Below, piece after piece: positions 15,539-36,302 of a stretch of DNA of 64,000 nt. The DNA lies in the IMG/VR virus record IMGVR_UViG_3300009430_000004, positions 62,001 through 126,000 of that record. The stretch is one strand, 5' to 3'. The notes under the pieces were generated by a model. That model saw only the letters and a list, made by a program, of their open reading frames with translations. It was not told the origin of the DNA and made no database searches. The position numbers and the translations under genes are program-made. The number at the start of each line of letters is the position of its first letter. Positions within the stretch are counted from its first letter, which is position 1.

Positions 15539-15604
15539 CTTCCTTAAAAAAATAATAGAGATAAGACACTACATCTTATCTCTATGTTTTATTTATATTA
15601 TTTG

Positions 15605-18600: not shown

Positions 18601-21600
18601 CTAAATTATCACCTATAAACTTCTTAGTACCTTCCATAAAGTCATTGAACCTAAGTCCAATACCATAGAATGTCTTAGCAGTCTTTTCAGCATCTAGTAG
18701 ACCAAGACTAAGTTTTTCTAGGGCTTCTGCTGCACCTGAAGCAGCTCTCATGCCAGTTGTAATCTTTCCATCTCCTTTGAGGTTGAAGTTCTGTTTTACC
18801 ATATCGTCATTCTTAAATGCGTTTACAGCTCCACCTAAAGCAGAATTGTCCCATACCATTTTAGCACCTTTCTTGGTTGCATCCCAAGCGACCGATGCTC
18901 CTTGTTGTATCTTTTCTCCTGCCCATTGAGCCCCCTGAGATATCTTCTCTCCAGCCCAAGCGGCTCCTTTCTTGGTAGCATCCCATGCTACAGAAGCACC
19001 TTGAGCTATCTTGTTTCCTGCCCACTGAGCACCTTCACCTATCTTATTTCCTGCCCAAGATAAGGCTCCAGTAGTGGCATTCCATGCCTTTGATGTTTTG
19101 TCCCCTACCCATGATGCTCCAGCTTTTATGCCTTTCCAAGTATTTGACACACCATCAGCAATGTGTTGTCCTACAGTTTTATTTACTTTGTCGTTATATG
19201 CATCTACCGATAACTTAGTACCGTTAGCTTCATTATAAGCATCTACTTCAGCTTTAAAGTCAGCTTGTGCTTGTTCGAGCTTAGCTCCTTTTTCATCAGA
19301 TGTTATAGCTTTGTAGATTTGAGTAGCCATCATCTGGATAAAGTCTACGCCAGTCATCTCAACACAGATATCGTTCAATATCTCTATTACGAAGAACCAA
19401 CTTACATTAAGTAATGCTTTCATACCTGACGATATAGCTCTCATTATCCAGTCAACTTCATCTGAATCAACTTTAAACAAGTGAGCCGCTTCAAAACCTC
19501 CAGTCACAGCACCCCATGTTGCCCATACAGCATCAGAAGCTAATGCTGTTGCAGCAGCGGCTGCTATTTTTGCAAGCCCTTTGGCTACTTTTGGTAAATA
19601 TTTAACCCATTTGACTTTCTTTAATACCTTACCTAGAACATCCATAGCAGGTCCTATAGCTTTGGCAGCTTTAGGGAACTTCTTTTCAAACATCCTAGCG
19701 ATATTATCAACAGCGTCCATAGCCATCTTTGTAAATTTCTCTATTCTCCCTTTGTTAACAGCATCAACTACATCGTCAGCACCATCAACAGCTATCTTAG
19801 TAACATCTTCTCCTGATTCTTTAGCAGCCTTAGCAGCGGCGAAATCTACTACCTTTCCACCACCAGCTTTCTTAACTACATCATTAGCAGGATTAACAGC
19901 TTGTGCTATTTTTGAAGTACCTTCAGTAGCTTCGTCAACAAATGATACATTAGAAGTTTCCATTATAACTTCGCCAGCTTCAACATCACCTTTATTACCA
20001 AATTGCTTAACTTTGTCAACCACTTTGGATATAGGTCCTTTATTCTTGGCGGTAGCCCTAGCGGCATCATCTGCCACATTAACTCCTTTTTCTACAATAT
20101 TAGGGAAGAATTTCTTAGCTATATTATCCCATGTTCCTGTGAACTTTTCTGCTATATTATCCCAAACACCTTTGCTCTTTTCTGCAATATCGTCCCATAC
20201 AACATGAGCTTTCTCAGATACATCATCCCACATTTCAATGCCTTTTTTCTTAATAGGTGGGAAGACTTCGTCCCATACTTTCTTAACACCTTGGAAGGTT
20301 TTCTTAAATTCTTGGATAGAATTCTTAAGAGGAGCCATTAGGTGTTCAGAAGCTTTCTTTATTCCATACCCAACCGCACGAGTTCCATGTTCAACTAAGT
20401 CAGAGTTTACTATGGTTGTTCCGCCAACATCGGTTCTACTATCATTACCCTTTCCAAGTAGCCATTCCATTGCCTTCTTAAGTAATGGTAGAAGTGTTAA
20501 TGCTCCAACCATAAATAATCCCTTCTTACCGAATATATCAGCCCAATCAGTTGTATGTTGTCTCGTATCTTTACCTAACCCTGCAAGCAATTCTAGAATT
20601 CTGTCTTTCCAATTTCGTTCATGTTGTTTTTCTTCCTTGAGGGCATTAGCTGCTTGCACATTAGCGGCAGTTAATCTAGATGCATGTGCTTGTCTAGCAG
20701 CCGCTTCTGATTCTAATCTTTCATTTTGTTTCTTAGCTTCTTCTTCTTTGTCATTACTTTCATCGAATTTATCCATTCCAGCAAGAACTGAAGCCGCTAA
20801 ATTATTATTCTTAAACTCTGGAGCAACCATTGCAGTGCTACTTCCTCCAACAAGACTGCTAACACTAAATCCACTTTGTCTTTCAATACCCTGCATATCA
20901 GTATCAATTCGTACTGGTAGTGGGGTTATTCTATTGAATGCTTCTTTCATACTGTCAGGACTTAGAGCTGTAGCTAAAACTCCATTGGATTGGTCAACTC
21001 TAACCGCAAATGGTTGGATCTTTTCAAATGAACTTACTATCTTTTCTGGGCATAAGTATACTGGTAGACAAACATCCGAACCAACTATTCTTACACTTTG
21101 AACAAGACTGTCTGTATTGGTTTCTAATGATCTAGGAGCAGCCATTCTATTAGTGCCTATACTTTGAACCTCTCTTACAACGTCCAGAGTACCACCAACT
21201 ACAACTACTTTTTGCTCTTGAATTCCTAATAACTTTCCTAATCCTTGAGATAGGAACTTTAATGGTGATGTAACTATTTGCCACAACGTATTTCCAACCT
21301 CAGCTAACTTCTCACCAACACCTGTGATAGTCTTAAGTGTAAAATCAGCAATGTTGCTTCCGACAGCAAATAGCATATCTGTCGTTCTCTTAGTCATTTC
21401 TAAACCGAAATCTGTAACTATTGTAAATGTCTTTCCTATAGTGTTACCAACAGTTTCAACCAACCCCATTGTCATCTTTCCGAATTTAACTAATAATTCA
21501 CCAGTACCTTTTCCAAGCTGGAAGAACAAAGAGCCAACTCCTTTTCCGAAGCCAATCATTGTTTCCTTCACTGCTCCCATAGCACCTGAGAATATCTTAG

Positions 21601-24600
21601 CTACACCCATTAGGGATTCTCCTATTGCAGGTCCCACTACTTTGAGGGTTTCACCGACTGCTTTAAAAGCGTCGCCTACCATACCAACTATTTGTCCAGG
21701 TAACTTAACAAGAGATATTACAGCAGTCTTAGCTATATTACCTAATTCAATAGCAAAGTTTTTAATTCCTTTGGCTATTGTAACAGGAACGCTAAGTATT
21801 GCCTTAGCAGCATCCTTTATACCTGTTCCTATTTTACCTATAAACTCACCAACTGTCCTAAGTTTTGCAACAAAGAACTCTTTAATGCTGTCTAAAGGTT
21901 TGTATAACATCTTTCTTACTCTGCCAAAGAACCCAACTCTGTCTTTGTTAGCTGGGTCAGCAGCACCATCATCTGAAGTATTAGCCATTTTCTGAACTGA
22001 TTTTCTGATTTTATTGATATTGCTACCAACACCGTTTAATTGTCCATTTACTTCAGAAGCTATATTTCTAACATCTGTTGCGATTCTAGCAAGAAGAGCA
22101 TCTTTACCCTTAGGTAATCCTTTGCTTATATTATTAACCAATCTATTGGAATCGTTAACTGGTCCAGTTGCTGAGCTTGCAGGAACTGACTGATGCCCAG
22201 CCGCTTCACGAATAGCATTGGCTTGTTTTGCAGGCACTACCATTTCACCTTGGTGAAGGTTAGCCTTATAATTATCATGAGGTACATTGTCTATACCAGA
22301 TGCATGTGAATGTTCTTCATCTTCTTCTTTGTCTTTATTCTTTCCGAACCCTAAAGCATCTTTTAATCCACTAAATTTTTCACCTATGTTATAAGTTAAT
22401 CTATCTGTTGGATTAGGTTCTGTTGCTTCATTATCTATGGTCGGAACTGGAGTATCTGAGCTTAATGTTAGCGTAGAGGATTTATGACCTGGGATTATCC
22501 TAGATGCTATTTTGTCTATTGCATTATTGATTGATTCTAAGAATCCCGATGTTCTACGCATTTCATTAGATATATCATTTTGAAGTATATCTCTATTCTC
22601 CTGAGAAACTGTTATAAGCTCTTCCATTCTATTATTAGTCTCTTCTTGAGCCTCAATGACTGGTGTAGCTCCAGCTTCTTCCTTTTTCTCCTCTTCGGTT
22701 TTAGGTTTAACTCCGAATAATTTAGCTAAAGTTGAATCTAGTGAACCACTTTCGATAGCTTTCCTAATCATCTTCTTCTGCTTCTTATCCAAAGATTTGA
22801 AGTCTACTGACCCACCTTCACCAAGCAATTGCTCTAGAGGAACTTTTGTCATATCTGATATTTTTCTAGCAATCTCTTCTTGTGGCATTCCTATCTTAGA
22901 CTTATTTTTACCTTCAAGATCAGGTCTGTAAATACGAGACACATCCACATCAAGATAATTACCATCTTTGTCTTTTAAGAAATTGTCATAATCATATTTT
23001 AACCCTAGGCTTCTATAGATATCTAAACGCTGTTTCTTAGCTTCGAGTAATGCTCTTTCTTTGGAGAAAGTTTCATCCTGCTCTTTATTCCTCTTAGCTA
23101 TTTGCTGCATTCTCTCACCATTAGGGTCTGCATAATCTGCCCCGTTTTCACCGTATCTTGCGGCATCACGGGTTTGTTTATTGAAATACATGTCATTCAG
23201 ACGCCCAAAGAATCCTTTACCTACTTTATTTCCGTCTTTATCTTTAGTAGAGAATAGACCAAGTTTTTCTCCTTTAGCTCGTCTTTCTTTGAAATTAAGT
23301 ATTCCACCTTCTTTAACAACATTTCCATTCTCATCAACAGTTTCTTTTCCATTCCAGCCTTGGTCTATCATGGAAGTTAAACCTCTTTGAGCATGTTTTT
23401 TAGTTAATCCTTGTGATAACATATTTAATCCTTTAAATGGAGCAGCTAATAGATTACCCATTATCTTCCCACTAAAATTAAGGATTTTTGAGAAGAAACC
23501 TTTTAATGGTTTCATAACCTTATCTTCCATAAACTTTCCAAACGGCATTCCAACATGTTTCTCAAATACATTTCCAATAAAACTAGTAAAGTTTTCCCAG
23601 CCCTTCTTAAACATATCTTTCATGTTAGTTACCATTATTGAGAATTCTTTCTTTAATGGTGCTATAGCATCAGCAAATGGATTTGCAATGCTCTTAGTGA
23701 ACCATTCTTTGATGTTGAGATTGATTTCTGAGAATTTAAGTTTAAGAGGTTCTTGGACTTCTAGTTTAAACCAGTTAGAGAATTTACCAATTAAACCACC
23801 TTGTCTCTTATTTGTCTTTTCATCAAACTCTCCAAATATAGCTTTTTTCCATTTCTCGGATGAAAGAGCAATACCAGCAGCCGCACCAAGTACAGCACCA
23901 CCAAGCGGACCTCCTGGAAGCATTAAAGCACCCATTATACCCAACTTGCTAGTTACTAACCCAAGGGCGGAACCCCCTATAATACCAGCTCCAACATTTC
24001 CAAGCAAATCTTTATTTTTATTGGTACTTCTAAATATCTTATTGAATATGCCACCATCTCGTTTTCCATCAGCACCTTTTTCACCAAATAGGAACTTTTG
24101 AACTGCTTCTGAACGATATAACATTGAACCTGCTATACCCATAACAGCTCCTCCTACAGGACCACCAGGAAGGAAGAATGATGGTAACATACCAAATCCT
24201 AATAATGGTTTCATAGCTCCTACAACAGCTCCACCAACCATACCAGCCTTATTCTTCTTGAAGAATTCTTGTGTAGACTTGCTTATAACTCCTCCTGTTC
24301 TCTCACCCATAGAATCTTTATCACCGAATAACCAGTTTTTAAATCTATCAGATTGAGTTAGAAAGCCTAAAGTTGAACCTACAATTGCTCCTCCAATAGG
24401 ACCGCCAGGTAATAGTAATGAACCCAATAATCCGAGCTTACCACCCATTAGTAAACCAGCACCACTTCCGATAATACCAAATGCTAATGATTTAGGTGCT
24501 CGTTCTTTTATCTTCTTTGTCATTTCATCAAATGCGATGTAATTATTATTCTTAGTACCGTCTTTGTTTTTCTTTGGACCAAACATGGCTTCACTAAAAT

Positions 24601-27526
24601 TAGTAAATCCATTCTTCAATGCATTGAATGCCCCAGTAAATACACCTTTCTGTAAATCAGGGTCATTAGCATTTTTATCACCAAAGAGATATATTTTTAA
24701 TGTATCCTTGAAACCACCAAATACTTTCTTCACTTCTCCAAATACACTATTTTCATTATCACCGAATGAAACTCCTGCTCTATTAGTATATCCTTTACCA
24801 GTAAAGTAATACTTAGCACCGTCCCATATATCGAGCATCTCATTGGCTGTATCAGACATTAAACCGCCTTCTCTAGCACCATTTTCACCAGTAGGTCTAC
24901 CAAAGATAAAGTCGGCAAGTTTTCCCATTTTCTTCTGTAAGGAAGTGTAAAAATCACTTTGTTTTATCTTAGTAAACATACCGTCTTTACCAAATAGAGC
25001 TTCTTTAGCAGGAAGGAATATATCGTTCTTTATCCAATTACCAAAGTCAGCAAATTTACCTTTAAGATTAGCAAGAGTTTGATCCATAAAAGATGAGCTT
25101 GGAGAGCCATCTTTGGATGCACCGAATACTATCTTAAACATAGCGGAGTCTATCTTATCAAATACACCTTTCATTAACTTAGCAGGTGTTTGTAAAATGT
25201 CGTCAACTTTCTCTCTTATCATGTTATATTTATCTTGAGCTCCACCTTTAAGGAACTTAGCGAACCATTTAGCAACAGTTTCCTGTTGATCTGGATTTTC
25301 TTGCTCGCTTTTCATTTTAGCATATGCTTCAGCATGTTCCCTGAGCTCTTTGTCTGATTTATCAGATAAATCAATAGATGAACCAAATACCCATTTACCA
25401 TCTTCCTCTTTCTTTCTTTTCTGTTCTTCGGATAACCTTTGAACAGCCTTGTTATATTTAGAGTTATTGGTAGCGTAGTCTGTTTCTTCTTTCTTCATCT
25501 TAGCAGTTCTTTCACGGATTCTATCTAACGGTGAAGGTGTCCCCCCTGAAGGTGTTGGGGGTGTTCCTGACCCATTCCCTGGAGATGTTGAGCTATCTCC
25601 ATTAGGAAACACAATGATGCCGTCAAGTAATATTTTCTTAATATCTCTTAAATAATCAAGAGTATTATGACCAAATTTATCAACAGCATTCATTCCAAAT
25701 CCTCGTCTAACCTCATATTTACCAGTCGTAGAATCACGCTTAATATGCTCATCAAAACCTGATGCCTGGAACGCAGACACACCATATTTATACTGGTTTT
25801 CTTCAGCCTCTGTCATAAATCTTTCGAGACCTTTTCTAGCATTAATATGAGAAGTACCAGCCATATCAAGTAATGTATTATTTGGTAATGACATTACTAT
25901 TTGTTTGAATAACCTCTGCATATCATTGCTCTTAAACTGATGAACATTCTTTAACTCATCAATAGTATTTCCTTCAGCATCCTTCTCATTAAAAGGATTT
26001 ACACCATAAGGTGTTTTAGCTAATTTAACGAAGAATTTATCTATATCTTCCCTAAATGCATCTCTATCCTTATTGTCTTCGATTAGGAATGCTTCAGAAC
26101 GAGTTTTAATTTCATCTATTACATCACTGAAGTTAGAAAGAATTGTTCTTTCTTGCTCCTTTTTGAATTCCTTTGACATTTCAAATACTGAACGGAATGA
26201 ACCTTTTTCATAGTCAAAGGCTTGCTCTTCCTTGCCAGATAAAGTGGCAAGTATCTTTCTCAAGTATGTTGGGATTACATCTGTGATGGCTTTCTTTGTG
26301 ACACCATCAAAGGGAACTGTCCCTTTCTTATATTGAGATAAATCAATAGATGTCTTAGTCTTAACATTTGCTCCAAATATTTGCCCTATGATTTGTAGAA
26401 ACGGATTATTAGAATTGAAAGCCAATCTATTAATCTTCATCAATAAAGCAGGGAAAAAATTTTGGAACGATTGATCCATATTTTCCATTGACTTCTTTAG
26501 GAAGCCAGGAATTAAAGATGCTACTATCTTGGTTGATATGAAACTAAGTGGTGATGCTGCCAAGAACTTCAATGTATCTGTATCTTCAAGCATTGATTTG
26601 ATTGGAGATAAGAACATGTTTGAGTCTATAGCATTACCAAGGTTTTTCTTCATCATATTCATGTAGCCTTTTACATTTAGACCACCCCTTGATAGTAACG
26701 CATTATCTAATGGATCTTCTTTAATTTTCTTTTCTTGTTCTTGGTCAACTCCCTTAGATGACACTGTTTGTAAATGTGTCAAAGTATCATTTAATACTTT
26801 AAGGTTTTCTTCATAGAATTTCAAAGAAGCTCCTATATATTTACCCATAGATTCACTTTGGAAATTGACCAAAAGACTTAAATTGGCATTCAGTGACTCC
26901 ATGCCTTGTACTATTGCGGAGCTAGTTTGTCTGTTTACAAGCAAAGCGTTTGATGAAAGTCCTATGTTAACATCATTAATAGACTGGGCAGCTTGTATAG
27001 TTGCCTGAGTTTGTCTTTCTAATGCTTTAACCATAGGATTATTTTTATTCATTGAAGGCTCTACTACATTGACAGTAGTGTTTTTATTAACAACTGGACT
27101 GGATATATCATCCATGGAATCTGATAGACTAAAGTCATCATTACCCATTTCAAAGTCTCCGTCCCCAAAGTCGAAATCGTCTAAGCCTTCGTTATAGATA
27201 GCTTCTTGTCGCTCTTTATTATAAATCTTACCAGACTTAATATCTTCAAGAGCATTTTTCAAAACATCCCTACCTATGCCTATTTGACTATTAGCATTTA
27301 TAGAATCTGTGACCCTTTTACCAATGGATCTAAAGTTTCTTATCTCTGTAAAGAGTTCGCTAACAGTATCTTCATTTGAGGTAACGAATTCCATTGATGC
27401 TGGCATCATCTCATTGACTAATTCTGTAGATGTATAGCCTAATGACTTACCAACATTCTTAAACCAATTTAAGGCTCCACTTGACTTAGTTGTAAGTGAA
27501 CCTTTATTCTTATTCTTTGTCGCCAT
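15605..27526 (-). CDS. Giant tape-measure-like tail protein with C39-like peptidase and lysozyme-like domains
   Basis: 3973 aa; Trp-periodic helical repeats; HASGIDNVPHDNYKANLHQGEMVVP motif typical of tape measure proteins; YYSQGDDRWG...GCGPTSMAMV...GHFVV...INDP (C39-like); HESGG...SIGIIQW (lysozyme-like). Confidence 0.8.
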   Translation of the reverse strand: MATKNKNKGSLTTKSSGALNWFKNVGKSLGYTSTELVNEMMPASMEFVTSNEDTVSELFTEIRNFRSIGKRVTDSINANSQIGIGRDVLKNALEDIKSGKIYNKERQEAIYNEGLDDFDFGDGDFEMGNDDFSLSDSMDDISSPVVNKNTTVNVVEPSMNKNNPMVKALERQTQATIQAAQSINDVNIGLSSNALLVNRQTSSAIVQGMESLNANLSLLVNFQSESMGKYIGASLKFYEENLKVLNDTLTHLQTVSSKGVDQEQEKKIKEDPLDNALLSRGGLNVKGYMNMMKKNLGNAIDSNMFLSPIKSMLEDTDTLKFLAASPLSFISTKIVASLIPGFLKKSMENMDQSFQNFFPALLMKINRLAFNSNNPFLQIIGQIFGANVKTKTSIDLSQYKKGTVPFDGVTKKAITDVIPTYLRKILATLSGKEEQAFDYEKGSFRSVFEMSKEFKKEQERTILSNFSDVIDEIKTRSEAFLIEDNKDRDAFREDIDKFFVKLAKTPYGVNPFNEKDAEGNTIDELKNVHQFKSNDMQRLFKQIVMSLPNNTLLDMAGTSHINARKGLERFMTEAEENQYKYGVSAFQASGFDEHIKRDSTTGKYEVRRGFGMNAVDKFGHNTLDYLRDIKKILLDGIIVFPNGDSSTSPGNGSGTPPTPSGGTPSPLDRIRERTAKMKKEETDYATNNSKYNKAVQRLSEEQKRKKEEDGKWVFGSSIDLSDKSDKELREHAEAYAKMKSEQENPDQQETVAKWFAKFLKGGAQDKYNMIREKVDDILQTPAKLMKGVFDKIDSAMFKIVFGASKDGSPSSSFMDQTLANLKGKFADFGNWIKNDIFLPAKEALFGKDGMFTKIKQSDFYTSLQKKMGKLADFIFGRPTGENGAREGGLMSDTANEMLDIWDGAKYYFTGKGYTNRAGVSFGDNENSVFGEVKKVFGGFKDTLKIYLFGDKNANDPDLQKGVFTGAFNALKNGFTNFSEAMFGPKKNKDGTKNNNYIAFDEMTKKIKERAPKSLAFGIIGSGAGLLMGGKLGLLGSLLLPGGPIGGAIVGSTLGFLTQSDRFKNWLFGDKDSMGERTGGVISKSTQEFFKKNKAGMVGGAVVGAMKPLLGFGMLPSFFLPGGPVGGAVMGIAGSMLYRSEAVQKFLFGEKGADGKRDGGIFNKIFRSTNKNKDLLGNVGAGIIGGSALGLVTSKLGIMGALMLPGGPLGGAVLGAAAGIALSSEKWKKAIFGEFDEKTNKRQGGLIGKFSNWFKLEVQEPLKLKFSEINLNIKEWFTKSIANPFADAIAPLKKEFSIMVTNMKDMFKKGWENFTSFIGNVFEKHVGMPFGKFMEDKVMKPLKGFFSKILNFSGKIMGNLLAAPFKGLNMLSQGLTKKHAQRGLTSMIDQGWNGKETVDENGNVVKEGGILNFKERRAKGEKLGLFSTKDKDGNKVGKGFFGRLNDMYFNKQTRDAARYGENGADYADPNGERMQQIAKRNKEQDETFSKERALLEAKKQRLDIYRSLGLKYDYDNFLKDKDGNYLDVDVSRIYRPDLEGKNKSKIGMPQEEIARKISDMTKVPLEQLLGEGGSVDFKSLDKKQKKMIRKAIESGSLDSTLAKLFGVKPKTEEEKKEEAGATPVIEAQEETNNRMEELITVSQENRDILQNDISNEMRRTSGFLESINNAIDKIASRIIPGHKSSTLTLSSDTPVPTIDNEATEPNPTDRLTYNIGEKFSGLKDALGFGKNKDKEEDEEHSHASGIDNVPHDNYKANLHQGEMVVPAKQANAIREAAGHQSVPASSATGPVNDSNRLVNNISKGLPKGKDALLARIATDVRNIASEVNGQLNGVGSNINKIRKSVQKMANTSDDGAADPANKDRVGFFGRVRKMLYKPLDSIKEFFVAKLRTVGEFIGKIGTGIKDAAKAILSVPVTIAKGIKNFAIELGNIAKTAVISLVKLPGQIVGMVGDAFKAVGETLKVVGPAIGESLMGVAKIFSGAMGAVKETMIGFGKGVGSLFFQLGKGTGELLVKFGKMTMGLVETVGNTIGKTFTIVTDFGLEMTKRTTDMLFAVGSNIADFTLKTITGVGEKLAEVGNTLWQIVTSPLKFLSQGLGKLLGIQEQKVVVVGGTLDVVREVQSIGTNRMAAPRSLETNTDSLVQSVRIVGSDVCLPVYLCPEKIVSSFEKIQPFAVRVDQSNGVLATALSPDSMKEAFNRITPLPVRIDTDMQGIERQSGFSVSSLVGGSSTAMVAPEFKNNNLAASVLAGMDKFDESNDKEEEAKKQNERLESEAAARQAHASRLTAANVQAANALKEEKQHERNWKDRILELLAGLGKDTRQHTTDWADIFGKKGLFMVGALTLLPLLKKAMEWLLGKGNDSRTDVGGTTIVNSDLVEHGTRAVGYGIKKASEHLMAPLKNSIQEFKKTFQGVKKVWDEVFPPIKKKGIEMWDDVSEKAHVVWDDIAEKSKGVWDNIAEKFTGTWDNIAKKFFPNIVEKGVNVADDAARATAKNKGPISKVVDKVKQFGNKGDVEAGEVIMETSNVSFVDEATEGTSKIAQAVNPANDVVKKAGGGKVVDFAAAKAAKESGEDVTKIAVDGADDVVDAVNKGRIEKFTKMAMDAVDNIARMFEKKFPKAAKAIGPAMDVLGKVLKKVKWVKYLPKVAKGLAKIAAAAATALASDAVWATWGAVTGGFEAAHLFKVDSDEVDWIMRAISSGMKALLNVSWFFVIEILNDICVEMTGVDFIQMMATQIYKAITSDEKGAKLEQAQADFKAEVDAYNEANGTKLSVDAYNDKVNKTVGQHIADGVSNTWKGIKAGASWVGDKTSKAWNATTGALSWAGNKIGEGAQWAGNKIAQGASVAWDATKKGAAWAGEKISQGAQWAGEKIQQGASVAWDATKKGAKMVWDNSALGGAVNAFKNDDMVKQNFNLKGDGKITTGMRAASGAAEALEKLSLGLLDAEKTAKTFYGIGLRFNDFMEGTKKFIGDNLVEPAKKAWTSAKEKINEKLEEFKKEASETWNGIKEGIGKQWNSAKETIGGALSAVGQYTSEKWEALKTNIGSAWDSAKTVVGEKLEAFKQNASETWDALKTNIGNAWSSAKETIGGKLEEFKANTSETWGNIKSNIGDAWGTAKGIIGEKLEAFKAEAGETWESIKSGVGKQWESAKSLIGTAAANIKDTAGNIWNSMPEPVKDRLGEAKETITTGAKKLADGAKELWGNIGDTISDKWKDIKKHLTEGLDRIGGFFKGIGNFFKNGFDSVKNFFTGRASDELDKLGWGEGGYGNVPVPDTKYNKSLNKRVPKVEGGGFGVESDTINNFAYYSQGDDRWGRYAYDHSPQFGTRSENPTLKARGCGPTSMAMVATQLTGKRYEPPQMADLAQKGGYSSSAGTSWGYFDKMASMFSLQKTEINPSSQRSQLQSMLDQHVPIILSGTRKHSADQSPFTSSGHFVVAVANDGPNGIVINDPRGPAYSKTYNLNTVLDEARKGWGFRYTGGSLPDPRNPEAYTPSSSPIGGTMENPTILDLFGKMSEAFSLYSENLYSGENKQLSWGDSFLTGSSSSDGYVGNFNIDFIPKNVQDAILKKTAELTVKHESGGKYTYGRNDVNASTGQRISPSIGIIQWRGGNAKAIMDRMLQEMPDNPEARYFASKNWNDSSPWSQSEQDRLEKYLASNMQVTKKVQDSFLLDHVKNRNLAPVYKYGVEPGKIKDPRSIAFLAEIANSGPALVKPFLERYSPTSATGKAEFQHFYNEFMSKSYWGPKSIYSNRLKSSFNSLVDWDPEQGGFGDRIVREPETILGGFGDMMCDITTKLTSSQRTSAPEKVQDVKGGFGDLTESITDTLNNALSGEGKIKSEGMRLPSFYEDPNPEVRSYMYGNSDIQKAGLSDDLLKTAIEVLRNIENNTGATSEGIKELNKKECVVNVITKSQTTTSIEGEDGEKPAGSTIVVAPPQTNNYINPIMGMANDRRNNKQQRDYQTAKGIAKGRTN
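17850..19150 (-). repeat. 11/22-residue Trp-periodic coding repeats within the tape-measure-like protein
   Basis: Examples: GAQWAGNKIAQGASVAWDATKKGAAWAGEKISQGAQWAGEKIQQGASVAWDATKK, and repeated KLEEFK..ASETW..IK..IG..W.SAK units. Boundaries approximate. Confidence 0.8.
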
Positions 27527-30228: not shown

Positions 30229-33200
30229 TTAATTCTTCATGTTTTTTATTTGCCTAACAGCAACTAATTTATCTCCTTCTACTTTACATGTTGGTTTGTT
30301 TGATGGTTTAATATAATGACCAACAACGGTAAGCTTATTATTCTTATCCAATATCGGACATACAATTTCACCCTCACTAAATTCTTTCTTAGTAAAATAG
30401 CTTGGATTATCATCTACATTCTTTGCTTTATAAAGATTGATTAATGTAGCTTCAAGCAATGCTCTTCCATCGTTTCCTCTATAATCTTTTCCACAGTCAG
30501 GGCATGTACCAGTTTCATTCCATGCTTCTTCATAACCTATGAGTGCTCCACAATGAACACATCTAGCCATGATATCTCCCATAGATTCTTTCACAGGCTC
30601 CCATGGTTTACCAGAATAGATTTCCTGTAACTTACGCTTCATTTCAACCAAAACCTTATTACCAAACATGGTAAGTAGTATAGATGGTGTCATACGAGCT
30701 AAGACAGCTCCAGGAGCTATAACTGAAGAAACTTCTTCCTGTGATCTAAACTCTGAGTAAGGTTCATAACCTTCAGGTATAACCTCACCAATGATTGACT
30801 TTAGTGCTGTAAAGAACGTTATCTTATCTCCAACACCTACAGTATCTTTATATTTAATATAGAACTCGATTAATACACCTTCTCCAACTTCTGTTCCTTT
30901 AATCTTACCGTCCTTAGCCTCTATTTTTCCAGTGGCATCATTTAACAGAACACCTGCTTTGAATACAGAGTCGGATTTATCGTATTTGTTAATAATCTTC
31001 TTTTTCTTATTTATTTTTTCATAGTAATCTGAAACTATCTTTCTTAATGTCGGTGAAAGTTCTTCTAGTTCTACTGTTGAATATATCTTTATATCTTCAA
31101 TGACACCTGAGTATTTTGATTTAATAGGTGTCTTACCAAGAGACTTAATCTCTTCCTTAAGTTCATTTCCTACAGAAGCTAGGAACTTATTCAATGAATC
31201 GTCATCGAATGATGTTTCAAACCTAATTAATTCATCACCAACTTGTACCTTCTGTCCAATATCAACTATATAATCAACATTGGCGTTTTTACCAAGGGAT
31301 ACTACTTTCTGCATAACTACATCAGCAGCCATATCATAGCTTAGCTTTTTAGTTACGAAGGTTGAGTCTTCATATGTTGAATAAGTTGATAAACATGCTA
31401 CTTTTTGTAATGAACCTATATTAAATCTATTTCCATCTAATGGTGATTCACTAAAGAAGTGTTTATCAGATGCAAGAATATCATTTTCCTTAAACTTCTG
31501 ACCTTTCTTTAAATTACATGATAGTTGATTTGATAGGAAGAATCCACCTGCACCATTCTTAACAACTCTTGGCTGTGTATCAATAGCTTGAACTGATCCA
31601 TCCTTATACTTAACCATTGCAATTCCAGCATCTTCGTTAACTTCTACAACTTCCCCATCCAACTTAGCTCTAACAATAAAGTCGTTAGAAAGATGGTAAT
31701 GGATTACTTGTTCAGATCCGTTTGAAATCAATACTGGTGATGATTTGGCTATAGGTATAATGTGTTTGGACTGTTTAGTAGCCATCGCTGTTCTAATAGA
31801 GTCGTCACGGGTAACCCCTAGAGGGGATAATAACTCGGCAGGAGAGAATAGATTAGCATCTGTAAGCTTCTCTAACCTATCATCATTTACTTCAATATAA
31901 CCTCTTGGACTTACAATGTTTGGTTCAAGGGATAACTGTCTAACAACACCACAGTTTGCATCTGGAGAGGTTGATATAGATAGAATTCCCATCATAGTTG
32001 GGTCGTAAGAACGTTTGTCCTGAGTATAAGCTTCTGGAAGGTTCATACCTACATGACCCTTTGGAGTTATTGCTCGGGACTTTTCAAGTTCAACGATAGG
32101 ATTTAATATACTATAATCCTCAACAGTCTGTAATGTTAACAGTTTCTTCAACACTATATCCTGAGGTACTGAAATCTTAACTGGATTGTTATTGTACGCT
32201 GTAATTCTATATTGAGAATAAGCGTCAGCTATCTGTTTATATAGAATAGCATTCACTATTTCATTTGAACGCACTCTGTAGATATTCATATTATTTTCTT
32301 TGATTGATGAATTATCTGCAAGCAGAGAATTCGCAAATAATATTAAGCTAACGAAATCTGTAGGATAATTTAAATCCTCAAGAACTTCTTTAGTTATAGG
32401 GTCTATCATAAAGTCATAGAAGTTGTCAAATGCGTTACCTATCATCTTATTATTAAACATGATTTCGAAGATTGATAAGTATGCATCTTTACCATCAAAG
32501 TCGGCATAATCAAATGCTTTAGTTGGTATATCTGCGAAGGCATTTAGTAACAATGAATTCTCATAAGGATATTTGTCATATACAAGATATCCATCAGCGA
32601 ATTGTACAACACCTTCATTATTTGATACTTTAGGACGAGTGTCACTAAAGTGATGTCTTATATTTGCTTTTCTTAGTACACTGGTTATACCTTCAACATA
32701 ACCTAATAGCAATAATACAGGAACATTCTTGCTCATGATTGTTGCCTTAGTGTACATAAACTTCTTACCAGCAGTTGCAGAATCAAAATCCTCTACAAGT
32801 TTACCTTGGTCGCATGATAAGATAAAGTCTATAATATCCATTCCACCCATCATCTGAGTATTCAAGTCCATCAATATAGGTTCATTATTATTAAGGAAGA
32901 AACCTATACAGAAGTCGTTTTCTGTGAGTCTGTATTTTTTAGTATCAATTCTTGCCCGAACTTCATCCTGATTGAAAACAAACTCCGCATTATTAACCTT
33001 TATAATGCTATAAATCTTTGATAACTCGTCATATTCGAGTATAGACTTATATTTTGAGTTAGCAGCTAAGTTGTTACCATACTTAACCTTAACATTACTA
33101 CTTGGATTCAACAATGCTTTCTTAAACTTCTCAATCTTAGATGAAACCTTAGTACCAAATCTCCTAATAAACATCTTGTTGTAATTACTACAAACTTGAA

Positions 33201-34704
33201 CTTCATCAGGTCCAGTTTTAACTACGGGTTTCATGAAGAGTTGTTTTACGATAAGCTTTTTATTTCCACCAAGATACATAAATTTGTCATCTATAAACTT
33301 AGGCACATCAAATCGTAATCTGTGACGTACTCTATTGGCATCTTCAAGGTCAACTATATAAGTTTCCTTGAAGTTCATTTCATCTGAGCTGTCCACAACT
33401 TCGATATTTCTAACATAAACAGGTATTGACTTATCGTTAAGGGAAGTAATTATATTAACTAAATCCTTCTTAGATAAGGTTTCGTTATATGCTTTTTCAA
33501 AGTGTGGATATTTAATAGTTGTCATATTCTTATTGGTTGTTGTAACCTTATTCGATACATCAATTGATGGAATAGCGATTGATTTAGTATCCATCTTTTG
33601 AATTTCCTCAAGAGTCATTCTCTCAAGCTTTATTTTCCTCTGTTTTTCACGAAGTTCCTGGTCTCTCTTTATAGATAGAGTTGAACGACCTGTTTTTTGA
33701 CTTTGGTTAATATCATATACTTTCTTCAGAAGCTGTTGGTCAACAATCAGCTTATCTTCAAGCTTTTTCTTAATATCGTCAGCATCATCTTTAATATTAA
33801 CCTTCTCTTCTTCCATGACATCTTCAAGTCTATCCTTAACACTTTCTTCAAGCTCAGGACTTTCCTCTTCGTTTCCAGTGAACTTGTACGTTTCAATGAA
33901 TTTTGCAGCAACATCATTGAATATCTCGTATCTCTTAGCATCTTCCTCTATTTGTTTTTCATCATCCAATGCTGAAAGGTCAGCATGTATTTTTGAAATT
34001 TCTCTACGGAAGGCTGTGAATGATTTATCATCACATTGAGCAGGATTAACTCTCATCATTGAGTCATTATTATAGAAGACTATGTTGACATCCCCTAATT
34101 CCTTAAATTTGTCGAAGTATTTATACATCGCAAAATAAAGAAGTAGAACAGGATTATCAAAATTTAATCTCCTATTCTCAGCAGCTCTCTTTAATCCAGC
34201 TATCCTCCAGTCATCCATTCCTACAACGATTGTTTTTATTTTATAACCGTCCAATCGAGGATCATTAATGATATTCTTGAGATAATCAATATACCCTTTT
34301 GTTTTTAAGTCATATTTTAGCTTTCTGGCAAAATCAAAATATATAGTATTGTAAGTAGCTAGGTCAAAATACACATTCCTTTCATTAAGATTACTTATTG
34401 AAGGGACAGTATTTAGGAATTTAATTCCTGACTCTAGCTCACCATATATCGCTTCTCTCTCTTTTCTGTAGATTTTCCTATATGTCTTATTAGCTAACTT
34501 ACCTTTATAAATAGAGTCCATATAATAGAAATGGAACTTATTATTGTGATAAAGGTTTTTGTTTTCTATAAGACGCATAGAAGCATCCAGAGAACCGTTA
34601 TTGATGAATACAATACTATACATACTTTGAGCTTTTTGATCTACAGGCAATTGTGCCTTTTGTTTAAACACTTTCAAGTGCGGAATATCCGAAATAAAAA
34701 TCAT
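30229..34704 (-). CDS. rpoB: Multisubunit RNA polymerase beta-like subunit (probably virion RNAP) with long N-terminal extension and C-terminal Zn ribbon/SET-like appendage
   Basis: STSPDANCGVVRQL, RTAMATKQSKH, TYEDSTFV, VGDKITFFTALKSIIGEV and PGAVLARMT correspond to bacterial beta motifs (ETPEG.NIG, RALMGANMQRQ, NFEDS, GDKMAGRHGNKG, PLGVPSRMN). Late-type promoter at 34738-34749. Confidence 0.9.
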   Translation of the reverse strand: MIFISDIPHLKVFKQKAQLPVDQKAQSMYSIVFINNGSLDASMRLIENKNLYHNNKFHFYYMDSIYKGKLANKTYRKIYRKEREAIYGELESGIKFLNTVPSISNLNERNVYFDLATYNTIYFDFARKLKYDLKTKGYIDYLKNIINDPRLDGYKIKTIVVGMDDWRIAGLKRAAENRRLNFDNPVLLLYFAMYKYFDKFKELGDVNIVFYNNDSMMRVNPAQCDDKSFTAFRREISKIHADLSALDDEKQIEEDAKRYEIFNDVAAKFIETYKFTGNEEESPELEESVKDRLEDVMEEEKVNIKDDADDIKKKLEDKLIVDQQLLKKVYDINQSQKTGRSTLSIKRDQELREKQRKIKLERMTLEEIQKMDTKSIAIPSIDVSNKVTTTNKNMTTIKYPHFEKAYNETLSKKDLVNIITSLNDKSIPVYVRNIEVVDSSDEMNFKETYIVDLEDANRVRHRLRFDVPKFIDDKFMYLGGNKKLIVKQLFMKPVVKTGPDEVQVCSNYNKMFIRRFGTKVSSKIEKFKKALLNPSSNVKVKYGNNLAANSKYKSILEYDELSKIYSIIKVNNAEFVFNQDEVRARIDTKKYRLTENDFCIGFFLNNNEPILMDLNTQMMGGMDIIDFILSCDQGKLVEDFDSATAGKKFMYTKATIMSKNVPVLLLLGYVEGITSVLRKANIRHHFSDTRPKVSNNEGVVQFADGYLVYDKYPYENSLLLNAFADIPTKAFDYADFDGKDAYLSIFEIMFNNKMIGNAFDNFYDFMIDPITKEVLEDLNYPTDFVSLILFANSLLADNSSIKENNMNIYRVRSNEIVNAILYKQIADAYSQYRITAYNNNPVKISVPQDIVLKKLLTLQTVEDYSILNPIVELEKSRAITPKGHVGMNLPEAYTQDKRSYDPTMMGILSISTSPDANCGVVRQLSLEPNIVSPRGYIEVNDDRLEKLTDANLFSPAELLSPLGVTRDDSIRTAMATKQSKHIIPIAKSSPVLISNGSEQVIHYHLSNDFIVRAKLDGEVVEVNEDAGIAMVKYKDGSVQAIDTQPRVVKNGAGGFFLSNQLSCNLKKGQKFKENDILASDKHFFSESPLDGNRFNIGSLQKVACLSTYSTYEDSTFVTKKLSYDMAADVVMQKVVSLGKNANVDYIVDIGQKVQVGDELIRFETSFDDDSLNKFLASVGNELKEEIKSLGKTPIKSKYSGVIEDIKIYSTVELEELSPTLRKIVSDYYEKINKKKKIINKYDKSDSVFKAGVLLNDATGKIEAKDGKIKGTEVGEGVLIEFYIKYKDTVGVGDKITFFTALKSIIGEVIPEGYEPYSEFRSQEEVSSVIAPGAVLARMTPSILLTMFGNKVLVEMKRKLQEIYSGKPWEPVKESMGDIMARCVHCGALIGYEEAWNETGTCPDCGKDYRGNDGRALLEATLINLYKAKNVDDNPSYFTKKEFSEGEIVCPILDKNNKLTVVGHYIKPSNKPTCKVEGDKLVAVRQIKNMKN

Positions 34705-34763
34705 TTTCGATCACCCTTTCTCATAATAGTCTAGTATTATAAGAATGTTAGTGATCGAAAACG
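34702..34763 (-). promoter_or_regulatory. RBS/start-codon-sequestering hairpin containing a late-type promoter, upstream of RNAP beta
   Basis: mRNA cguuuucgaucac...gugaucgaaaaUG and uucuuauaaua/uauuaugagaa arms; AACA-TTCTTA-TA at 34749-34738 lies in the 5' arm. Confidence 0.75.
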
Positions 34764-34922
34764 TTATATACCCTACGAGTGTATGTGTTACAAAATCCCT
34801 CAACTTGGAAGCCTTACCCCCAAGTACATCTTGGGAAAAATCGCAAATTTGTTATCATAGAGCGTTGTCTCAGCACCCGTCATCTATGACCTCCTGGTTA
34901 CTTCTAAAAAGGTTTTCACCAT
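34764..34922 (-). ncRNA. Putative structured small RNA or leader (contains a possible 27-codon sORF at 34800..34883)
   Basis: Follows promoter 34923-34934; GC-richer than its flanks; stems ucauaga/ucuauga and acuugg/ccaagu. Confidence 0.4.
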
Positions 34923-35122
34923 TAATTTAATGTTTGTCCATATATCTTTTTAAACTTTAATTTTTGAGCTAACATGTGTATAATAAAGAAAACCGTAAAC
35001 TTGAGATAATTAAGTATATATTATTAATGTGTATAGCACCAGATAATAGATAAGCTGTACGTAATATATACACTTATATTTCATGTGGGTAAACAACAAA
35101 CAAAATTTAGGAGGAATAAACC

Positions 35123-35374
35123 ATGGAAAAATCAATAAAAAATTATTTCGGAATCGGTGTTAGAAAAGGTGTTAAGTTAGAAAGTCAAGGATTAGTTGAC
35201 TTAAGTATATTAGCTGAGCTTAAGATTAGAAAAGGAACAAACAAAACTCTCATAGCAAAGCAAATGCAACAAGGTGAGAACATAGAGAAATATATAAACA
35301 ATGTAAAACAGACTTTGTTAGATTTAGGCGTACAAGAAAAAGACATTTTAGGAATCTACAATTTCTTAGCGTAG
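35123..35374 (+). CDS. Hypothetical early protein
   Basis: 83 aa; SD AGGAGG; early-type promoter at 35015-35024; terminator near 35405-35440. Confidence 0.65.
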   Translation: MEKSIKNYFGIGVRKGVKLESQGLVDLSILAELKIRKGTNKTLIAKQMQQGENIEKYINNVKQTLLDLGVQEKDILGIYNFLA

Positions 35375-35492
35375 CAAGTTTCTTTAATTTGTCCCATAGA
35401 ATAAAAATAGGGTTCGATTCGTCGAGCCTTATTTTTTTTATATTTATATATTATTTATAGGTATAGTAATACGTATTAAAGGAGGTAATTAT

Positions 35493-36302
35493 ATGACTAT
35501 CAAACTAGATAGAATAGTTTGTCAACAGAGAATAACAAGAAAAAGGCACATATGGTGGCAATATACTATTGCTGATGACAAAATATATTTGAGAACTATA
35601 AAAGGTGGATATCCGAAGTTCGGAGAATTATTCATCGCATTAATGAGAGATGTACCGTTTTGTAGACATTATTTTTCCGAGGATTTTATAGTAGATAAAT
35701 ATATTACTCTAGAATCAGGAATATTTGGTACAGGTGGTAAGAAGGATGTCACACATCATCTATGGGCGTATATAGATCAAGATGATGAAGATATTAATGT
35801 GATAAACTTGTCAGATGAATATGAATTTAAAGAACCTTTAATATATCCTATAGACAAGTTAATCCAGATATTCAATATGTTGTATTCGGATTATATTGAC
35901 GAATATATAATACAAGATAAACGCTATTATAAATTAAATACTGTTGAGCTATATGACAAGAATTGGTATAAACGAAGTTATAGTGAATTATTTGTTAGAT
36001 TTAATAAGATGGATGAAGAAAAGCTCCCATATATTTTATCTAAACATTTTGGAGGATTTACTAAGAAAGATTCCAAATTAGAAGTATTTAATTATAATAT
36101 GTGCACTATGTGGGATAAGAAGGATGAGAGAGGTATTAAATACCGTGATGTTATAAAGAAGAAGTTTGGTGGATTACTTAGTAGTTTCTATATAGTATAC
36201 TATGCAGATGGGTGTACTATTGATACAACACGGGTAGAAGATAAATTCCTTAAAAAGTTATTAGGGGAGTTTACTAATAAAAATGAGCAAATTAAAAAAT
36301 AA
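35493..36302 (+). CDS. Hypothetical early protein
   Basis: 269 aa; SD AAGGAGGT; early-type promoter at 35445-35454. Confidence 0.65.
   Translation: MTIKLDRIVCQQRITRKRHIWWQYTIADDKIYLRTIKGGYPKFGELFIALMRDVPFCRHYFSEDFIVDKYITLESGIFGTGGKKDVTHHLWAYIDQDDEDINVINLSDEYEFKEPLIYPIDKLIQIFNMLYSDYIDEYIIQDKRYYKLNTVELYDKNWYKRSYSELFVRFNKMDEEKLPYILSKHFGGFTKKDSKLEVFNYNMCTMWDKKDERGIKYRDVIKKKFGGLLSSFYIVYYADGCTIDTTRVEDKFLKKLLGEFTNKNEQIKK

What the first reader, a model, noticed from the sequence alone, without database searches (positions are those of the whole stretch)
34702..34763. Hairpin that locks the RNAP beta start codon, with a late promoter embedded in its 5' arm
Seen: on the minus strand, CGUUUUCGAUCAC pairs with GUGAUCGAAAAUG (part of the SD, the spacer and the AUG), and UUCUUAUAAUA pairs with UAUUAUGAGAA. 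An AACA-TTCTTA-TA promoter lies inside the 5' arm. Known: T4 genes e, soc, 49 and I-TevI use this logic, where read-through transcripts are translationally silent and transcripts from the internal late promoter lack the 5' arm. Inference: RNAP synthesis is uncoupled from read-through of the upstream 34923 transcript.
Basis: partly seen in the sequence, partly recalled or inferred. Interest (0 to 1): 0.65.

Follow-up and report, generated by a model that had tools for sequence, protein, structure and literature searches.

The report
Promoter-in-hairpin insulator before phage RNAP gene
In front of a giant phage's virion RNA polymerase beta gene lies a conserved RNA hairpin that buries the ribosome-binding site and resembles a terminator, while the gene's own late promoter sits inside the hairpin, so probably only transcripts coming from upstream are shut off.

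Summary
On the minus strand, 34763-34702 folds into a two-helix hairpin (14 bp plus 11 bp, -28.1 kcal/mol, z -7.75). Its 3' arm holds the SD GGUGA, the spacer and the AUG of a 1491-aa gene. That gene is the virion RNA polymerase beta subunit of an AR9/PBS1-like jumbo phage.

An AACA-N6-TA motif sits in the 5' half, with a predicted start at A34738, 34 nt before the AUG. This motif is the phage's real late-promoter class, peaking 10-40 nt upstream of 57 genes. The AR9 ortholog g189 has a mapped start site at the same kind of motif.

Six distinct relatives in three or four lineages keep the structure through compensatory changes (98% of cells paired, 5 of 11 outer pairs changed on both sides).

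The upstream promoter is also late-type, so the effect is insulation rather than early/late timing. The hairpin also occupies the place where AR9 and another relative carry a canonical terminator.

Best reading: it terminates the upstream unit (a conserved structured RNA) and also locks the SD. No RNA data could be obtained.

The parts
34750..34763 (-). Outer 5' arm of the hairpin (CGUUUUCGAUCACU), upstream of the embedded promoter
   Evidence: Covaries with the SD-spacer arm in relatives.
34738..34749 (-). Embedded late promoter AACA-TTCTTA-TA. AACA is 34749-34746 and the predicted start site is A34738, giving a 34-nt leader.
   Evidence: The motif class peaks 10-40 nt upstream of start codons genome-wide. 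PWM rank is 29 of 51. AR9 g189 has a mapped start site at AACA-AATAGA-TA (PMC5312081). A gp226 homolog is present in the genome.
34735..34745 (-). Inner 5' arm (UUCUUAUAAUA). It contains the promoter N6, -1 and +1.
   Evidence: Replaced by an unrelated but still complementary pair of arms in L011.
34729..34734 (-). Hairpin loop CUAGAC
34718..34728 (-). Inner 3' arm (UAUUAUGAGAA)
34702..34715 (-). Outer 3' arm: SD GGUGA (34715-34711), spacer, and AUG (34704-34702)
   Evidence: The SD lies inside the arm in all six copies.
34692..34701 (-). U-rich tail AUUUUUAUUU directly after the stem (codons 2-4, Ile-Phe-Ile)
   Evidence: Only 5 of 211 genes have TTTTT in codons 2-5 and only 2 of 211 reach 7 T in 8. 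The tail resembles those of the genome's terminator-like sites. It is present in all six hairpin copies. The U-ending synonymous codons are unexpected from codon usage.
30229..34704 (-). Virion RNA polymerase beta subunit gene (1491 aa, uninterrupted)
   Evidence: PHROG 14872/3148 at E 1e-164/1e-160. About 37% identity to AR9 g189, a virion RNAP subunit.
34923..34934 (-). Upstream late-type promoter AACA-TTAAAT-TA (predicted start 34923), the source of read-through RNA
   Evidence: A late-type promoter also precedes the conserved upstream RNA in L034, L014/28/33, L092, L011 and L111.
34797..34899 (-). Conserved structured RNA of the upstream unit. It has a single-stranded CAGGAGG, hairpin 1 (about 34889-34854) and hairpin 2 (34824-34804). 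The ORFs in it are not conserved.
   Evidence: 12 of 20 pairs with compensatory changes. CM R2 finds a single copy in the genome at 90.8 bits.
34774..34782 (-). Conserved ACACTCGTA, 10 nt before the hairpin. In L092 the same motif precedes a canonical terminator.

Best explanation
The element insulates the beta gene from upstream transcription and can form only in RNA that starts upstream of the gene's own promoter.

RNA begun at the upstream late promoter (predicted start 34923) runs through a conserved structured RNA and then transcribes both arms of the hairpin. The inner helix nucleates and the 14-bp outer helix zips up to the G of the AUG. The U-rich tail AUUUUUAUUU follows immediately. 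Most of these RNAs should therefore terminate within codons 2-4 of the beta gene. Any RNA that escapes termination carries its SD and AUG inside a -28 kcal/mol structure and should be poorly translated.

The beta mRNA proper starts at the AACA-N6-TA promoter lying between and inside the 5' arms (predicted +1 at A34738). It lacks the outer 5' arm entirely, so it neither terminates nor hides its RBS.

Shown: the structure, its covariation, the promoter class with its positional enrichment, and the U tail with its rarity. Inferred: the start sites, termination, and translational block. The likely purpose is quantitative insulation of virion RNAP beta synthesis from a neighbouring late unit, not early/late timing.
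For: Structure:
- -28.1 kcal/mol, z -7.75, and the extreme outlier among 57 late leaders.

Conservation:
- Six distinct copies (window, L034, L011/L012, L014, L028, L033) fold to -27 to -33 kcal/mol (z -6 to -8). Nineteen other relatives give z above -2.3.
- 98.3% of cells are paired, against 40-53% when the partner is slid. The covariation score is 0.44 against 0.25 in shuffles (0 of 500 reach it).
- Each 5' arm pairs 11/11 with its own 3' arm but only 7-8/11 across lineages.
- The inner helix of L011 has an unrelated sequence but is still complementary.
- G.U pairs make the sense RNA more stable than the antisense in 5 of 6 copies.

Promoter:
- Genome-wide peak of AACA-N6-TW 10-40 nt upstream of start codons, with the extended consensus T-A(+1)-A(+2) matched.
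- The AR9 ortholog g189 is late (0/24/390 at 5/20/40 min) with a mapped start at AACA-AATAGA-TA and a 26-nt leader (PMC5312081).
- A gp226 homolog is present at E 8e-21.

Lock:
- RBS unpaired probability is 0.11-0.24 for long leaders and 0.39-0.60 for short ones in all copies.

Terminator:
- A U tail follows all six copies and is rare at gene starts.
- U-ending synonymous codons are used against codon usage (ATT 35%, TTT 55%).
- The L014 clade uses a UUG start, which makes the U run contiguous with the stem.
- There is no other minus-strand terminator between 34923 and the gene.
- AR9 and L092 have a canonical terminator at this position.
- Two other late promoters in this genome are embedded in hairpin-plus-U-run terminators.
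- AR9 RNA-seq shows strong termination at predicted terminators.
Against: - There is no RNA evidence of any kind.
- The hairpin is not a textbook terminator. It has 25 bp in two helices with an internal loop and an A-U-rich base, and the simple terminator scan did not list it.
- The U run could simply reflect a conserved Ile-Phe N-terminus in an AT-rich genome.
- SD occlusion could be a geometric by-product of placing the U tract in the first codons.
- The copies come from only three or four independent lineages.
- It is unknown whether these phage RNA polymerases terminate at such a structure.
- The upstream promoter scores modestly (8.5 against 15.0 for the embedded one).
Confidence: 0.5

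Rival explanations
1. Pure translational lock. Read-through RNA continues into the gene but is not translated because the SD and AUG are paired. The U run is only the Ile-Phe-Ile coding sequence.
For: The SD lies in the 3' arm in all six copies, and the arm tracks spacer changes. RBS accessibility is 0.11 for the long leader against 0.60 for the short one. There is a direct T4 precedent (PMC3014915). Two other promoter-embedded terminators in this genome place their U run before the SD, so covering the SD here looks deliberate.
Against: The U tail is present in 6 of 6 copies and is rare elsewhere. U-ending synonymous codons and UUG starts occur. Canonical terminators sit at the equivalent position in AR9 and L092. 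The upstream unit has no other terminator. The upstream promoter is late-type, so the temporal rationale of T4 is missing.
Confidence: 0.17
2. Pure intrinsic terminator of the upstream unit that has come to overlap the next gene's promoter and RBS through compaction. SD occlusion is incidental and of no consequence, because almost no RNA reads through.
For: The same terminator evidence as above. L011's copy of the upstream RNA ends in a similarly long bipartite hairpin plus U run, so such shapes serve as terminator candidates in this group.
Against: A terminator does not need to reach into the SD and start codon, and the genome's other two embedded-promoter terminators do not. The stem base is A-U rich. 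Placing the U tract in codons 2-4 constrains the protein, which suggests the overlap with the RBS is itself useful.
Confidence: 0.2
3. RNase III processing site. The roughly 25-bp near-continuous duplex is cut by host RNase III, which separates the upstream RNA from the beta message and destroys the SD of read-through RNA.
For: The length and coaxial two-helix shape fit the roughly two turns of dsRNA that RNase III needs (own knowledge). The structure is RNA-level and strand-specific.
Against: No specific feature points to RNase III. The U tail and the positional equivalence to terminators are left unexplained. The host is unknown.
Confidence: 0.05
4. DNA-level element. Either the inverted repeat binds a regulator over the promoter, or it extrudes as a cruciform that presents the template-strand UUGU/TTGT to the gp226-like subunit, which in AR9 reads the template strand.
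For: AACA is exactly the unpaired 5' side of the internal loop in the window and in L034. AR9 nvRNAP recognises the template strand of its promoter (PMC5449584 and PMC9209446, abstracts).
Against: In L011 and in L014/28/33, AACA is largely paired in the predicted fold. G.U pairs favour RNA on one strand. No other late promoter in the genome has such a structure. Arm sequences differ between lineages, which is unlike a protein-binding site.
Confidence: 0.04
5. No function: a fortuitous inverted repeat inherited by descent.
For: Only three or four lineages carry it. T-rich promoter upstream regions tend to pair with purine-rich SDs in this genome.
Against: Compensatory changes at 5 of 11 outer pairs, with 100% pairing retained at about 60% protein identity. 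z is -7.75.
Confidence: 0.04

Closest known systems
T4 leaders of genes e, soc, 49 and I-TevI (RBS-sequestering hairpin with a late promoter in or next to its 5' arm; Uzan & Miller 2010, PMC3014915)
   Same: The SD and/or AUG is buried in a helix that exists only in RNA started upstream. A late promoter is placed so that its own transcripts lack the 5' strand. The arrangement is conserved among related phages.
   Different: T4 uses host RNAP with gp55 and TATAAATA promoters; here the promoter is the AACA-N6-TA class of a phage-encoded multisubunit RNAP. In T4 the silenced RNAs are early or middle, whereas here the upstream promoter is late-type. This element also carries a terminator-like U tail in the coding sequence. 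The regulated gene is the virion RNAP beta subunit.
AR9 g189 upstream region (terminator of g191, then the late promoter P189 with a mapped start site; Lavysh et al. 2017, PMC5312081)
   Same: Orthologous gene, the same promoter class, a short leader (26 nt against 34 nt), and a terminator function immediately upstream.
   Different: In AR9 (and in L092) the terminator, promoter and RBS lie side by side. In the window's clade they are superimposed in one hairpin.
Promoter-embedded intrinsic terminators elsewhere in this genome (window 15584-15556 minus strand; genome 208.9 kb plus strand)
   Same: AACA-N6-TA lies inside or at the 5' arm of a hairpin followed by a U run, so only read-through RNA can form it.
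   Different: Those are single 8-13-bp stems whose U run precedes the SD. The RBS is left free, and they are much weaker (-10.7 and -13.5 kcal/mol).
Riboswitch or attenuator expression platforms in which one hairpin is both terminator and SD sequester (own knowledge)
   Same: One helix followed by Us that also covers the SD.
   Different: No ligand- or protein-sensing alternative fold was found. The conserved upstream RNA and the hairpin occur separately in L011, L092 and L111.

Membership tests
T4-type inhibitory leader with embedded late promoter | SD and/or start codon paired in a stable helix in the long transcript | tested here: met
   The SD is in the stem in 6 of 6 copies and the AUG in 3 of 6.
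T4-type inhibitory leader with embedded late promoter | A promoter placed so that its transcripts lack the 5' strand of the helix | tested here: met
   Met in silico only: the motif, its genome-wide positional enrichment, and the mapped AR9 ortholog start site. The start site here was not measured.
T4-type inhibitory leader with embedded late promoter | The silenced long transcripts belong to an earlier temporal class than the embedded promoter | tested here: not met
   The upstream promoter is the same late type and is conserved. The only early-like site on this strand (35070) deviates from the consensus and is not conserved.
T4-type inhibitory leader with embedded late promoter | Long transcripts translated much less than short ones | not testable with these tools
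   Only thermodynamic accessibility is available: 0.11 against 0.60.
Intrinsic (factor-independent) terminator | Stable hairpin followed at once by a U-rich tract | tested here: met
   There are 7 U in the best 8 nt directly after the stem, in all six copies.
Intrinsic (factor-independent) terminator | Compact single stem with a short loop and a G+C-rich base | tested here: not met
   Two helices with an internal loop and an A-U-rich base. Not listed by the consensus scan. A similar bipartite candidate ends the upstream RNA in L011.
Intrinsic (factor-independent) terminator | Lies at the end of a transcription unit that has no other terminator | tested here: met
   Canonical terminators sit at the equivalent position in L092 and AR9.
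Intrinsic (factor-independent) terminator | RNA 3' ends map to the U tract | not testable with these tools
AR9-type nvRNAP late promoter AACA-(6N)-TA/G | Motif with A/G at +1, over-represented a short distance upstream of late genes | tested here: met
   The definition comes from PMC5312081.
AR9-type nvRNAP late promoter AACA-(6N)-TA/G | Genome encodes the promoter-specificity subunit (gp226 homolog) | tested here: met
   G000:C1:37511-38812, E 7.9e-21, covering residues 17-439 of 464.
AR9-type nvRNAP late promoter AACA-(6N)-TA/G | Uracil-containing template DNA is required for recognition | not tested
   Base modification cannot be read from the sequence.
Riboswitch or attenuator with this hairpin as its expression platform | The sensing RNA and the hairpin are always coupled, with a mutually exclusive alternative fold | tested here: not met
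   The hairpin occurs without an adjacent upstream RNA in L011. The upstream RNA occurs without the hairpin in L092 and L111.

The most novel reading that the evidence does not exclude
A three-in-one regulatory module in a jumbo phage with its own RNA polymerases. One conserved hairpin is at once the terminator of a previously undescribed, conserved, late-transcribed structured RNA, the housing of the nvRNAP promoter of the virion RNAP beta gene, and a fail-safe lock on that gene's RBS. The linked small RNA, which is syntenic with the beta gene in at least seven phage lineages and carries an exposed SD-like CAGGAGG, would itself act in virion RNAP production or packaging.
Probability: 0.15. 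Interest if true: 0.7.

Novelty: new variant of a known kind. Interest (0 to 1): 0.5.

Why it matters
Jumbo phages of the AR9/phiKZ type transcribe their genomes with their own two multisubunit RNA polymerases. Almost nothing is known about how they tune expression beyond promoter class.

This element suggests that the T4 trick of placing a promoter inside an inhibitory hairpin has arisen independently in a different transcription system. It guards the gene for the polymerase that must be packaged into virions. It also suggests that these phages superimpose terminator, promoter and RBS in one structure.

If confirmed, the element would be a compact, portable part that blocks upstream input while allowing local initiation. 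It would also be a handle for studying termination by non-canonical phage RNAPs. Finally, it flags a conserved small RNA next to the virion RNAP gene.

Tried and rejected
Searches that gave nothing:
- Megablast of the region against phage records found no match.
- Pfam gave no RNAP hit for the 1491-aa protein. PHROGs and tblastn were needed to identify it.
- Rfam on 34500-35500 found nothing relevant.
I did not try to obtain reads any other way.
- The covariance model of the hairpin (R1) found no further copies in about 100 related loci.
- The genome-contig scan gave only relatives at 40% identity or less.
- The first MAFFT alignment (A2) misaligned the 3' arm. I used an alignment trimmed to the arms (A4), in which L011's inner helix and two outer pairs are still out of register, so the counts are conservative.

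Ideas rejected:
- AACA presented unpaired, as an internal loop or cruciform. It holds only in the window and L034.
- The hairpin as expression platform of the upstream RNA. The two are separable.
- An upstream ORF translated through the hairpin and ending at the UGA of GGUGA. That frame exists in the window (TTG at 34803), but neither the frame nor the stop is conserved.
- Early-promoter read-through as in T4. The site at 35070(-) has a C at motif position 10 and a C at +1, and no relative has a same-strand early site.
- A generic property of late leaders. The other 56 leaders are far less structured.

Not used: the large protein searches, structure prediction and complex prediction. The question is about RNA, and the family scans settled the protein's identity.
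Full report
**What the window is.** The window is bases 62001-126000 of a complete 218,088-bp virus record with direct terminal repeats. The record is 33% G+C and matches metagenome contig Ga0114938_1000007. ORF 30229..34704(-) encodes 1491 aa. It matches PHROG 'RNA polymerase beta subunit' families at E 1e-164 and 1e-160. Its nearest characterised homologs are the beta subunits of Staphylococcus, Listeria and Bacillus jumbo phages. One is AR9 g189 (about 37% identity), annotated as a virion RNAP subunit. Pfam alone does not recognise the protein.

**The observation.** RNAfold gives a 14-bp outer helix (34763-34750 with 34715-34702). Between the helices is an internal loop whose 5' side is AACA. 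The 11-bp inner helix pairs 34745-34735 with 34728-34718, and the loop is CUAGAC. The energy is -28.1 kcal/mol against -10.0 +/- 2.3 for shuffles, z -7.75. The 3' arm is GGUGA (SD), the spacer and the AUG. The start codon is placed correctly, because M1 and P8 are invariant across relatives.

**The promoter.**
- AR9 late promoters are AACA-(6N)-TA/G, with the last base as +1 (PMC5312081).
- This genome has 576 AACA-N6-TW sites. The predicted +1 falls sharply 10-40 nt upstream of start codons: 44 sites lie in the 20-39 nt bins, against about 3 per bin as background. Fifty-seven genes carry such a site in front of a strong SD.
- The extended consensus is T-rich upstream, a W-rich N6, then T, A(+1), A(+2). 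The beta site matches it and ranks 29th of 51.
- The genome encodes a homolog of the AR9 promoter-specificity subunit gp226 (E 8e-21).
- The orthologous AR9 gene g189 is late (0/24/390 at 5/20/40 min). It has an experimentally mapped start at AACA-AATAGA-TA with a 26-nt leader.
- Nearly all relatives keep such a motif 24-46 nt before the beta start.

**Is the hairpin special?** Among the 57 late leaders of this genome it is the extreme outlier (z -7.8, next -3.4). It switches predicted RBS accessibility from 0.11 for RNA starting upstream to 0.60 for RNA starting at +1.

**Conservation.**
- Protein-guided scans gave about 160 loci.
- Six distinct sequences keep the two-helix hairpin: the window, L034, L011/L012, L014, L028 and L033, at 54-63% protein identity. 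They fold to -27 to -33 kcal/mol with z -6 to -8. Nineteen other relatives have z above -2.3.
- In an N-terminal tree the hairpin-bearing phages sit in one clade as three or four deep branches, together with some hairpin-less members.
- The five SD pairs of the outer helix are constant. The 5' arm follows the changes in the spacer pairs. On alignment A4, 98.3% of cells pair, against 40-53% with slid partners. Five of 11 outer pairs changed on both sides. The covariation score is 0.44 against 0.25 in shuffles (0 of 500 reach it).
- Swapping arms between lineages drops complementarity from 11/11 to 7-8/11 and roughly halves the energy.
- L011's inner helix (AUGUGGUA with UACCAUAU) is unrelated in sequence to the window's.
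- G.U pairs make the sense RNA more stable than the antisense in five of six copies, which points to an RNA-level function on the gene's strand.
- In every copy the predicted +1 lies near the 3' end of the inner 5' arm, so the gene's own transcript keeps at most 4 nt of it.

**What reads into the hairpin.**
- The region 34705-35122 is a divergent intergenic region. A perfect AR9-like early promoter (TATATATTAT-N6-G) at 35015(+) points rightward.
- On the beta strand the only early-like site (35070) deviates at motif position 10 and at +1, and it is not conserved.
- What is conserved on the beta strand is a late-type promoter (AACA-TTAAAT-TA, +1 at 34923) followed by a conserved RNA (34899-34797). 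This RNA has a single-stranded CAGGAGG and two hairpins, with compensatory changes in 12 of 20 pairs.
- The ORFs that start after the CAGGAGG differ in frame and length: 27, 39, 9, 9 and 42 aa. The unit is therefore probably non-coding.
- It is single-copy in this genome and lies upstream of beta in L034, L014/28/33, L092 and L111. In L011 it lies 1.8 kb away.
- There is no minus-strand terminator-like site between 34923 and the hairpin.
- The read-through RNA is therefore late, not early. The T4-style temporal rationale does not carry over.

**The overlooked terminator signature.**
- Directly after the stem comes AUUUUUAUUU (34701-34692, codons 2-4). All six copies have 6-7 U in the best 8 nt there. 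Eighteen of 19 hairpin-less relatives have 2-5.
- In this genome only 5 of 211 genes have TTTTT in codons 2-5, and only 2 reach 7 of 8.
- The codons are the U-ending synonyms, although ATT is 35% of Ile and TTT 55% of Phe.
- The L014 clade uses a UUG start, which joins the U run to the stem.
- Tails of the genome's terminator-like sites look the same, for example ATTTTTTTAT and ATTTTTTAAT.
- In L092 the conserved ACACTCGTA at the end of the upstream RNA is followed by a canonical 14-bp stem plus T8 terminator. The promoter, SD and ATG then follow side by side. AR9 has the same linear order upstream of g189.
- In L011 the relocated upstream RNA ends in a long bipartite hairpin plus U run.
- Two other late promoters of this genome are embedded in hairpin-plus-U-run structures: window 15584-15556(-) with +1 at 15577, and genome 208.9 kb(+).
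- AR9 RNA-seq shows strong termination at predicted terminators.
- The hairpin therefore sits where a terminator is expected, looks like one at its 3' end, and is the only candidate for ending the upstream unit.

**Mechanism.** I take the element to be an insulator with two layers. It terminates the upstream late unit within the first codons of beta. It also occludes the SD, and in half the copies the start codon, in whatever RNA reads through. RNA from the embedded promoter is immune to both effects.
- The structure, the covariation, the promoter class and the rarity of the U tail are shown.
- The start sites, termination and translational block are inferred.
- I cannot separate the two layers in silico. 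SD occlusion could be a by-product of putting the U tract in the coding region. Against that, the genome's other two embedded-promoter terminators keep clear of the RBS, which suggests the overlap here is used.
- Rivals considered are lock only, terminator only, an RNase III site, a DNA-level operator or cruciform, and chance. They are scored in the report sections.

**Comparison with known systems.** The element works like the T4 e/soc/49/I-TevI leaders (PMC3014915). It fails the temporal-class criterion and adds a terminator signature. The promoter is a member of the AR9 late class by every criterion I could test. The element is not a riboswitch platform, because the hairpin and the upstream RNA occur separately. 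I rate it a new variant of a known kind. Interest is moderate: well supported by comparative data, but with no RNA evidence.

**Limits.** The host is unknown, since the phage is known only from metagenomes. Only three or four independent lineages carry the element.

Noticed in passing
window 34797-34934 (-): A conserved, late-promoter-driven structured RNA lies upstream of the virion RNAP beta gene. It has an exposed CAGGAGG and two hairpins with compensatory changes in 12 of 20 pairs, and the ORFs within it are not conserved. It is single-copy in the genome, has no Rfam match, and is syntenic with beta in at least seven phage lineages. It may be a new phage small RNA.
   Followed up: partly
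window 15546-15588 (-): A late promoter AACA-TAGAGA-TA (+1 at 15577) is embedded in the 5' arm of an 11-bp hairpin (15584-15556). A UUAUUUUUUU tail follows, between the 3973-aa gene and the next gene. This looks like a terminator that only read-through RNA can form. A second case lies at genome 208.9 kb (+), outside the window.
   Followed up: partly
window 35015-35031 (+) and 49 sites genome-wide: An AR9-like early promoter motif TATATATTAT-N6-R occurs as 49 perfect copies, mostly 20-100 nt upstream of genes. The copy at 35015 points away from the beta gene toward the plus-strand genes that start at 35123. A variant site, TATATATTAC-N6-C, lies at 35070 (-), and the same variant sits 18 nt upstream of a gene at genome 170396 (-).
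   Followed up: partly
L014, L028, L033, L038 (match spans 5.6-6.7 kb): The beta genes of several relatives are interrupted. The first open frame stops after about 880-990 aa and the match spans far more DNA than 1400 codons, as in AR9 g189 with its introns and HNH gene. The window's gene is one uninterrupted 1491-aa frame.
   Followed up: no
window 15605-27526 (-): A single 3973-aa ORF with its own AACA-N6-TA promoter 28 nt upstream. Its G+C (about 0.36-0.41) is higher than the surrounding 0.30-0.35.
   Followed up: no
genome G000:C1:37511-38812 (+), outside the window: A homolog of the AR9 nvRNAP promoter-specificity subunit gp226 (25% identity, E 8e-21, 503-aa open frame).
   Followed up: partly
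window 35403-35436 (+): A strong terminator-like site (15-bp stem, A tract before and T tract after) follows the small plus-strand gene 35123-35374. A further early promoter motif lies at 35445.
   Followed up: no
L014, L028, L033, L031, L038 gene starts: The beta gene starts with UUG in several relatives. In the hairpin-bearing L014 clade this makes the U run contiguous with the stem.
   Followed up: partly
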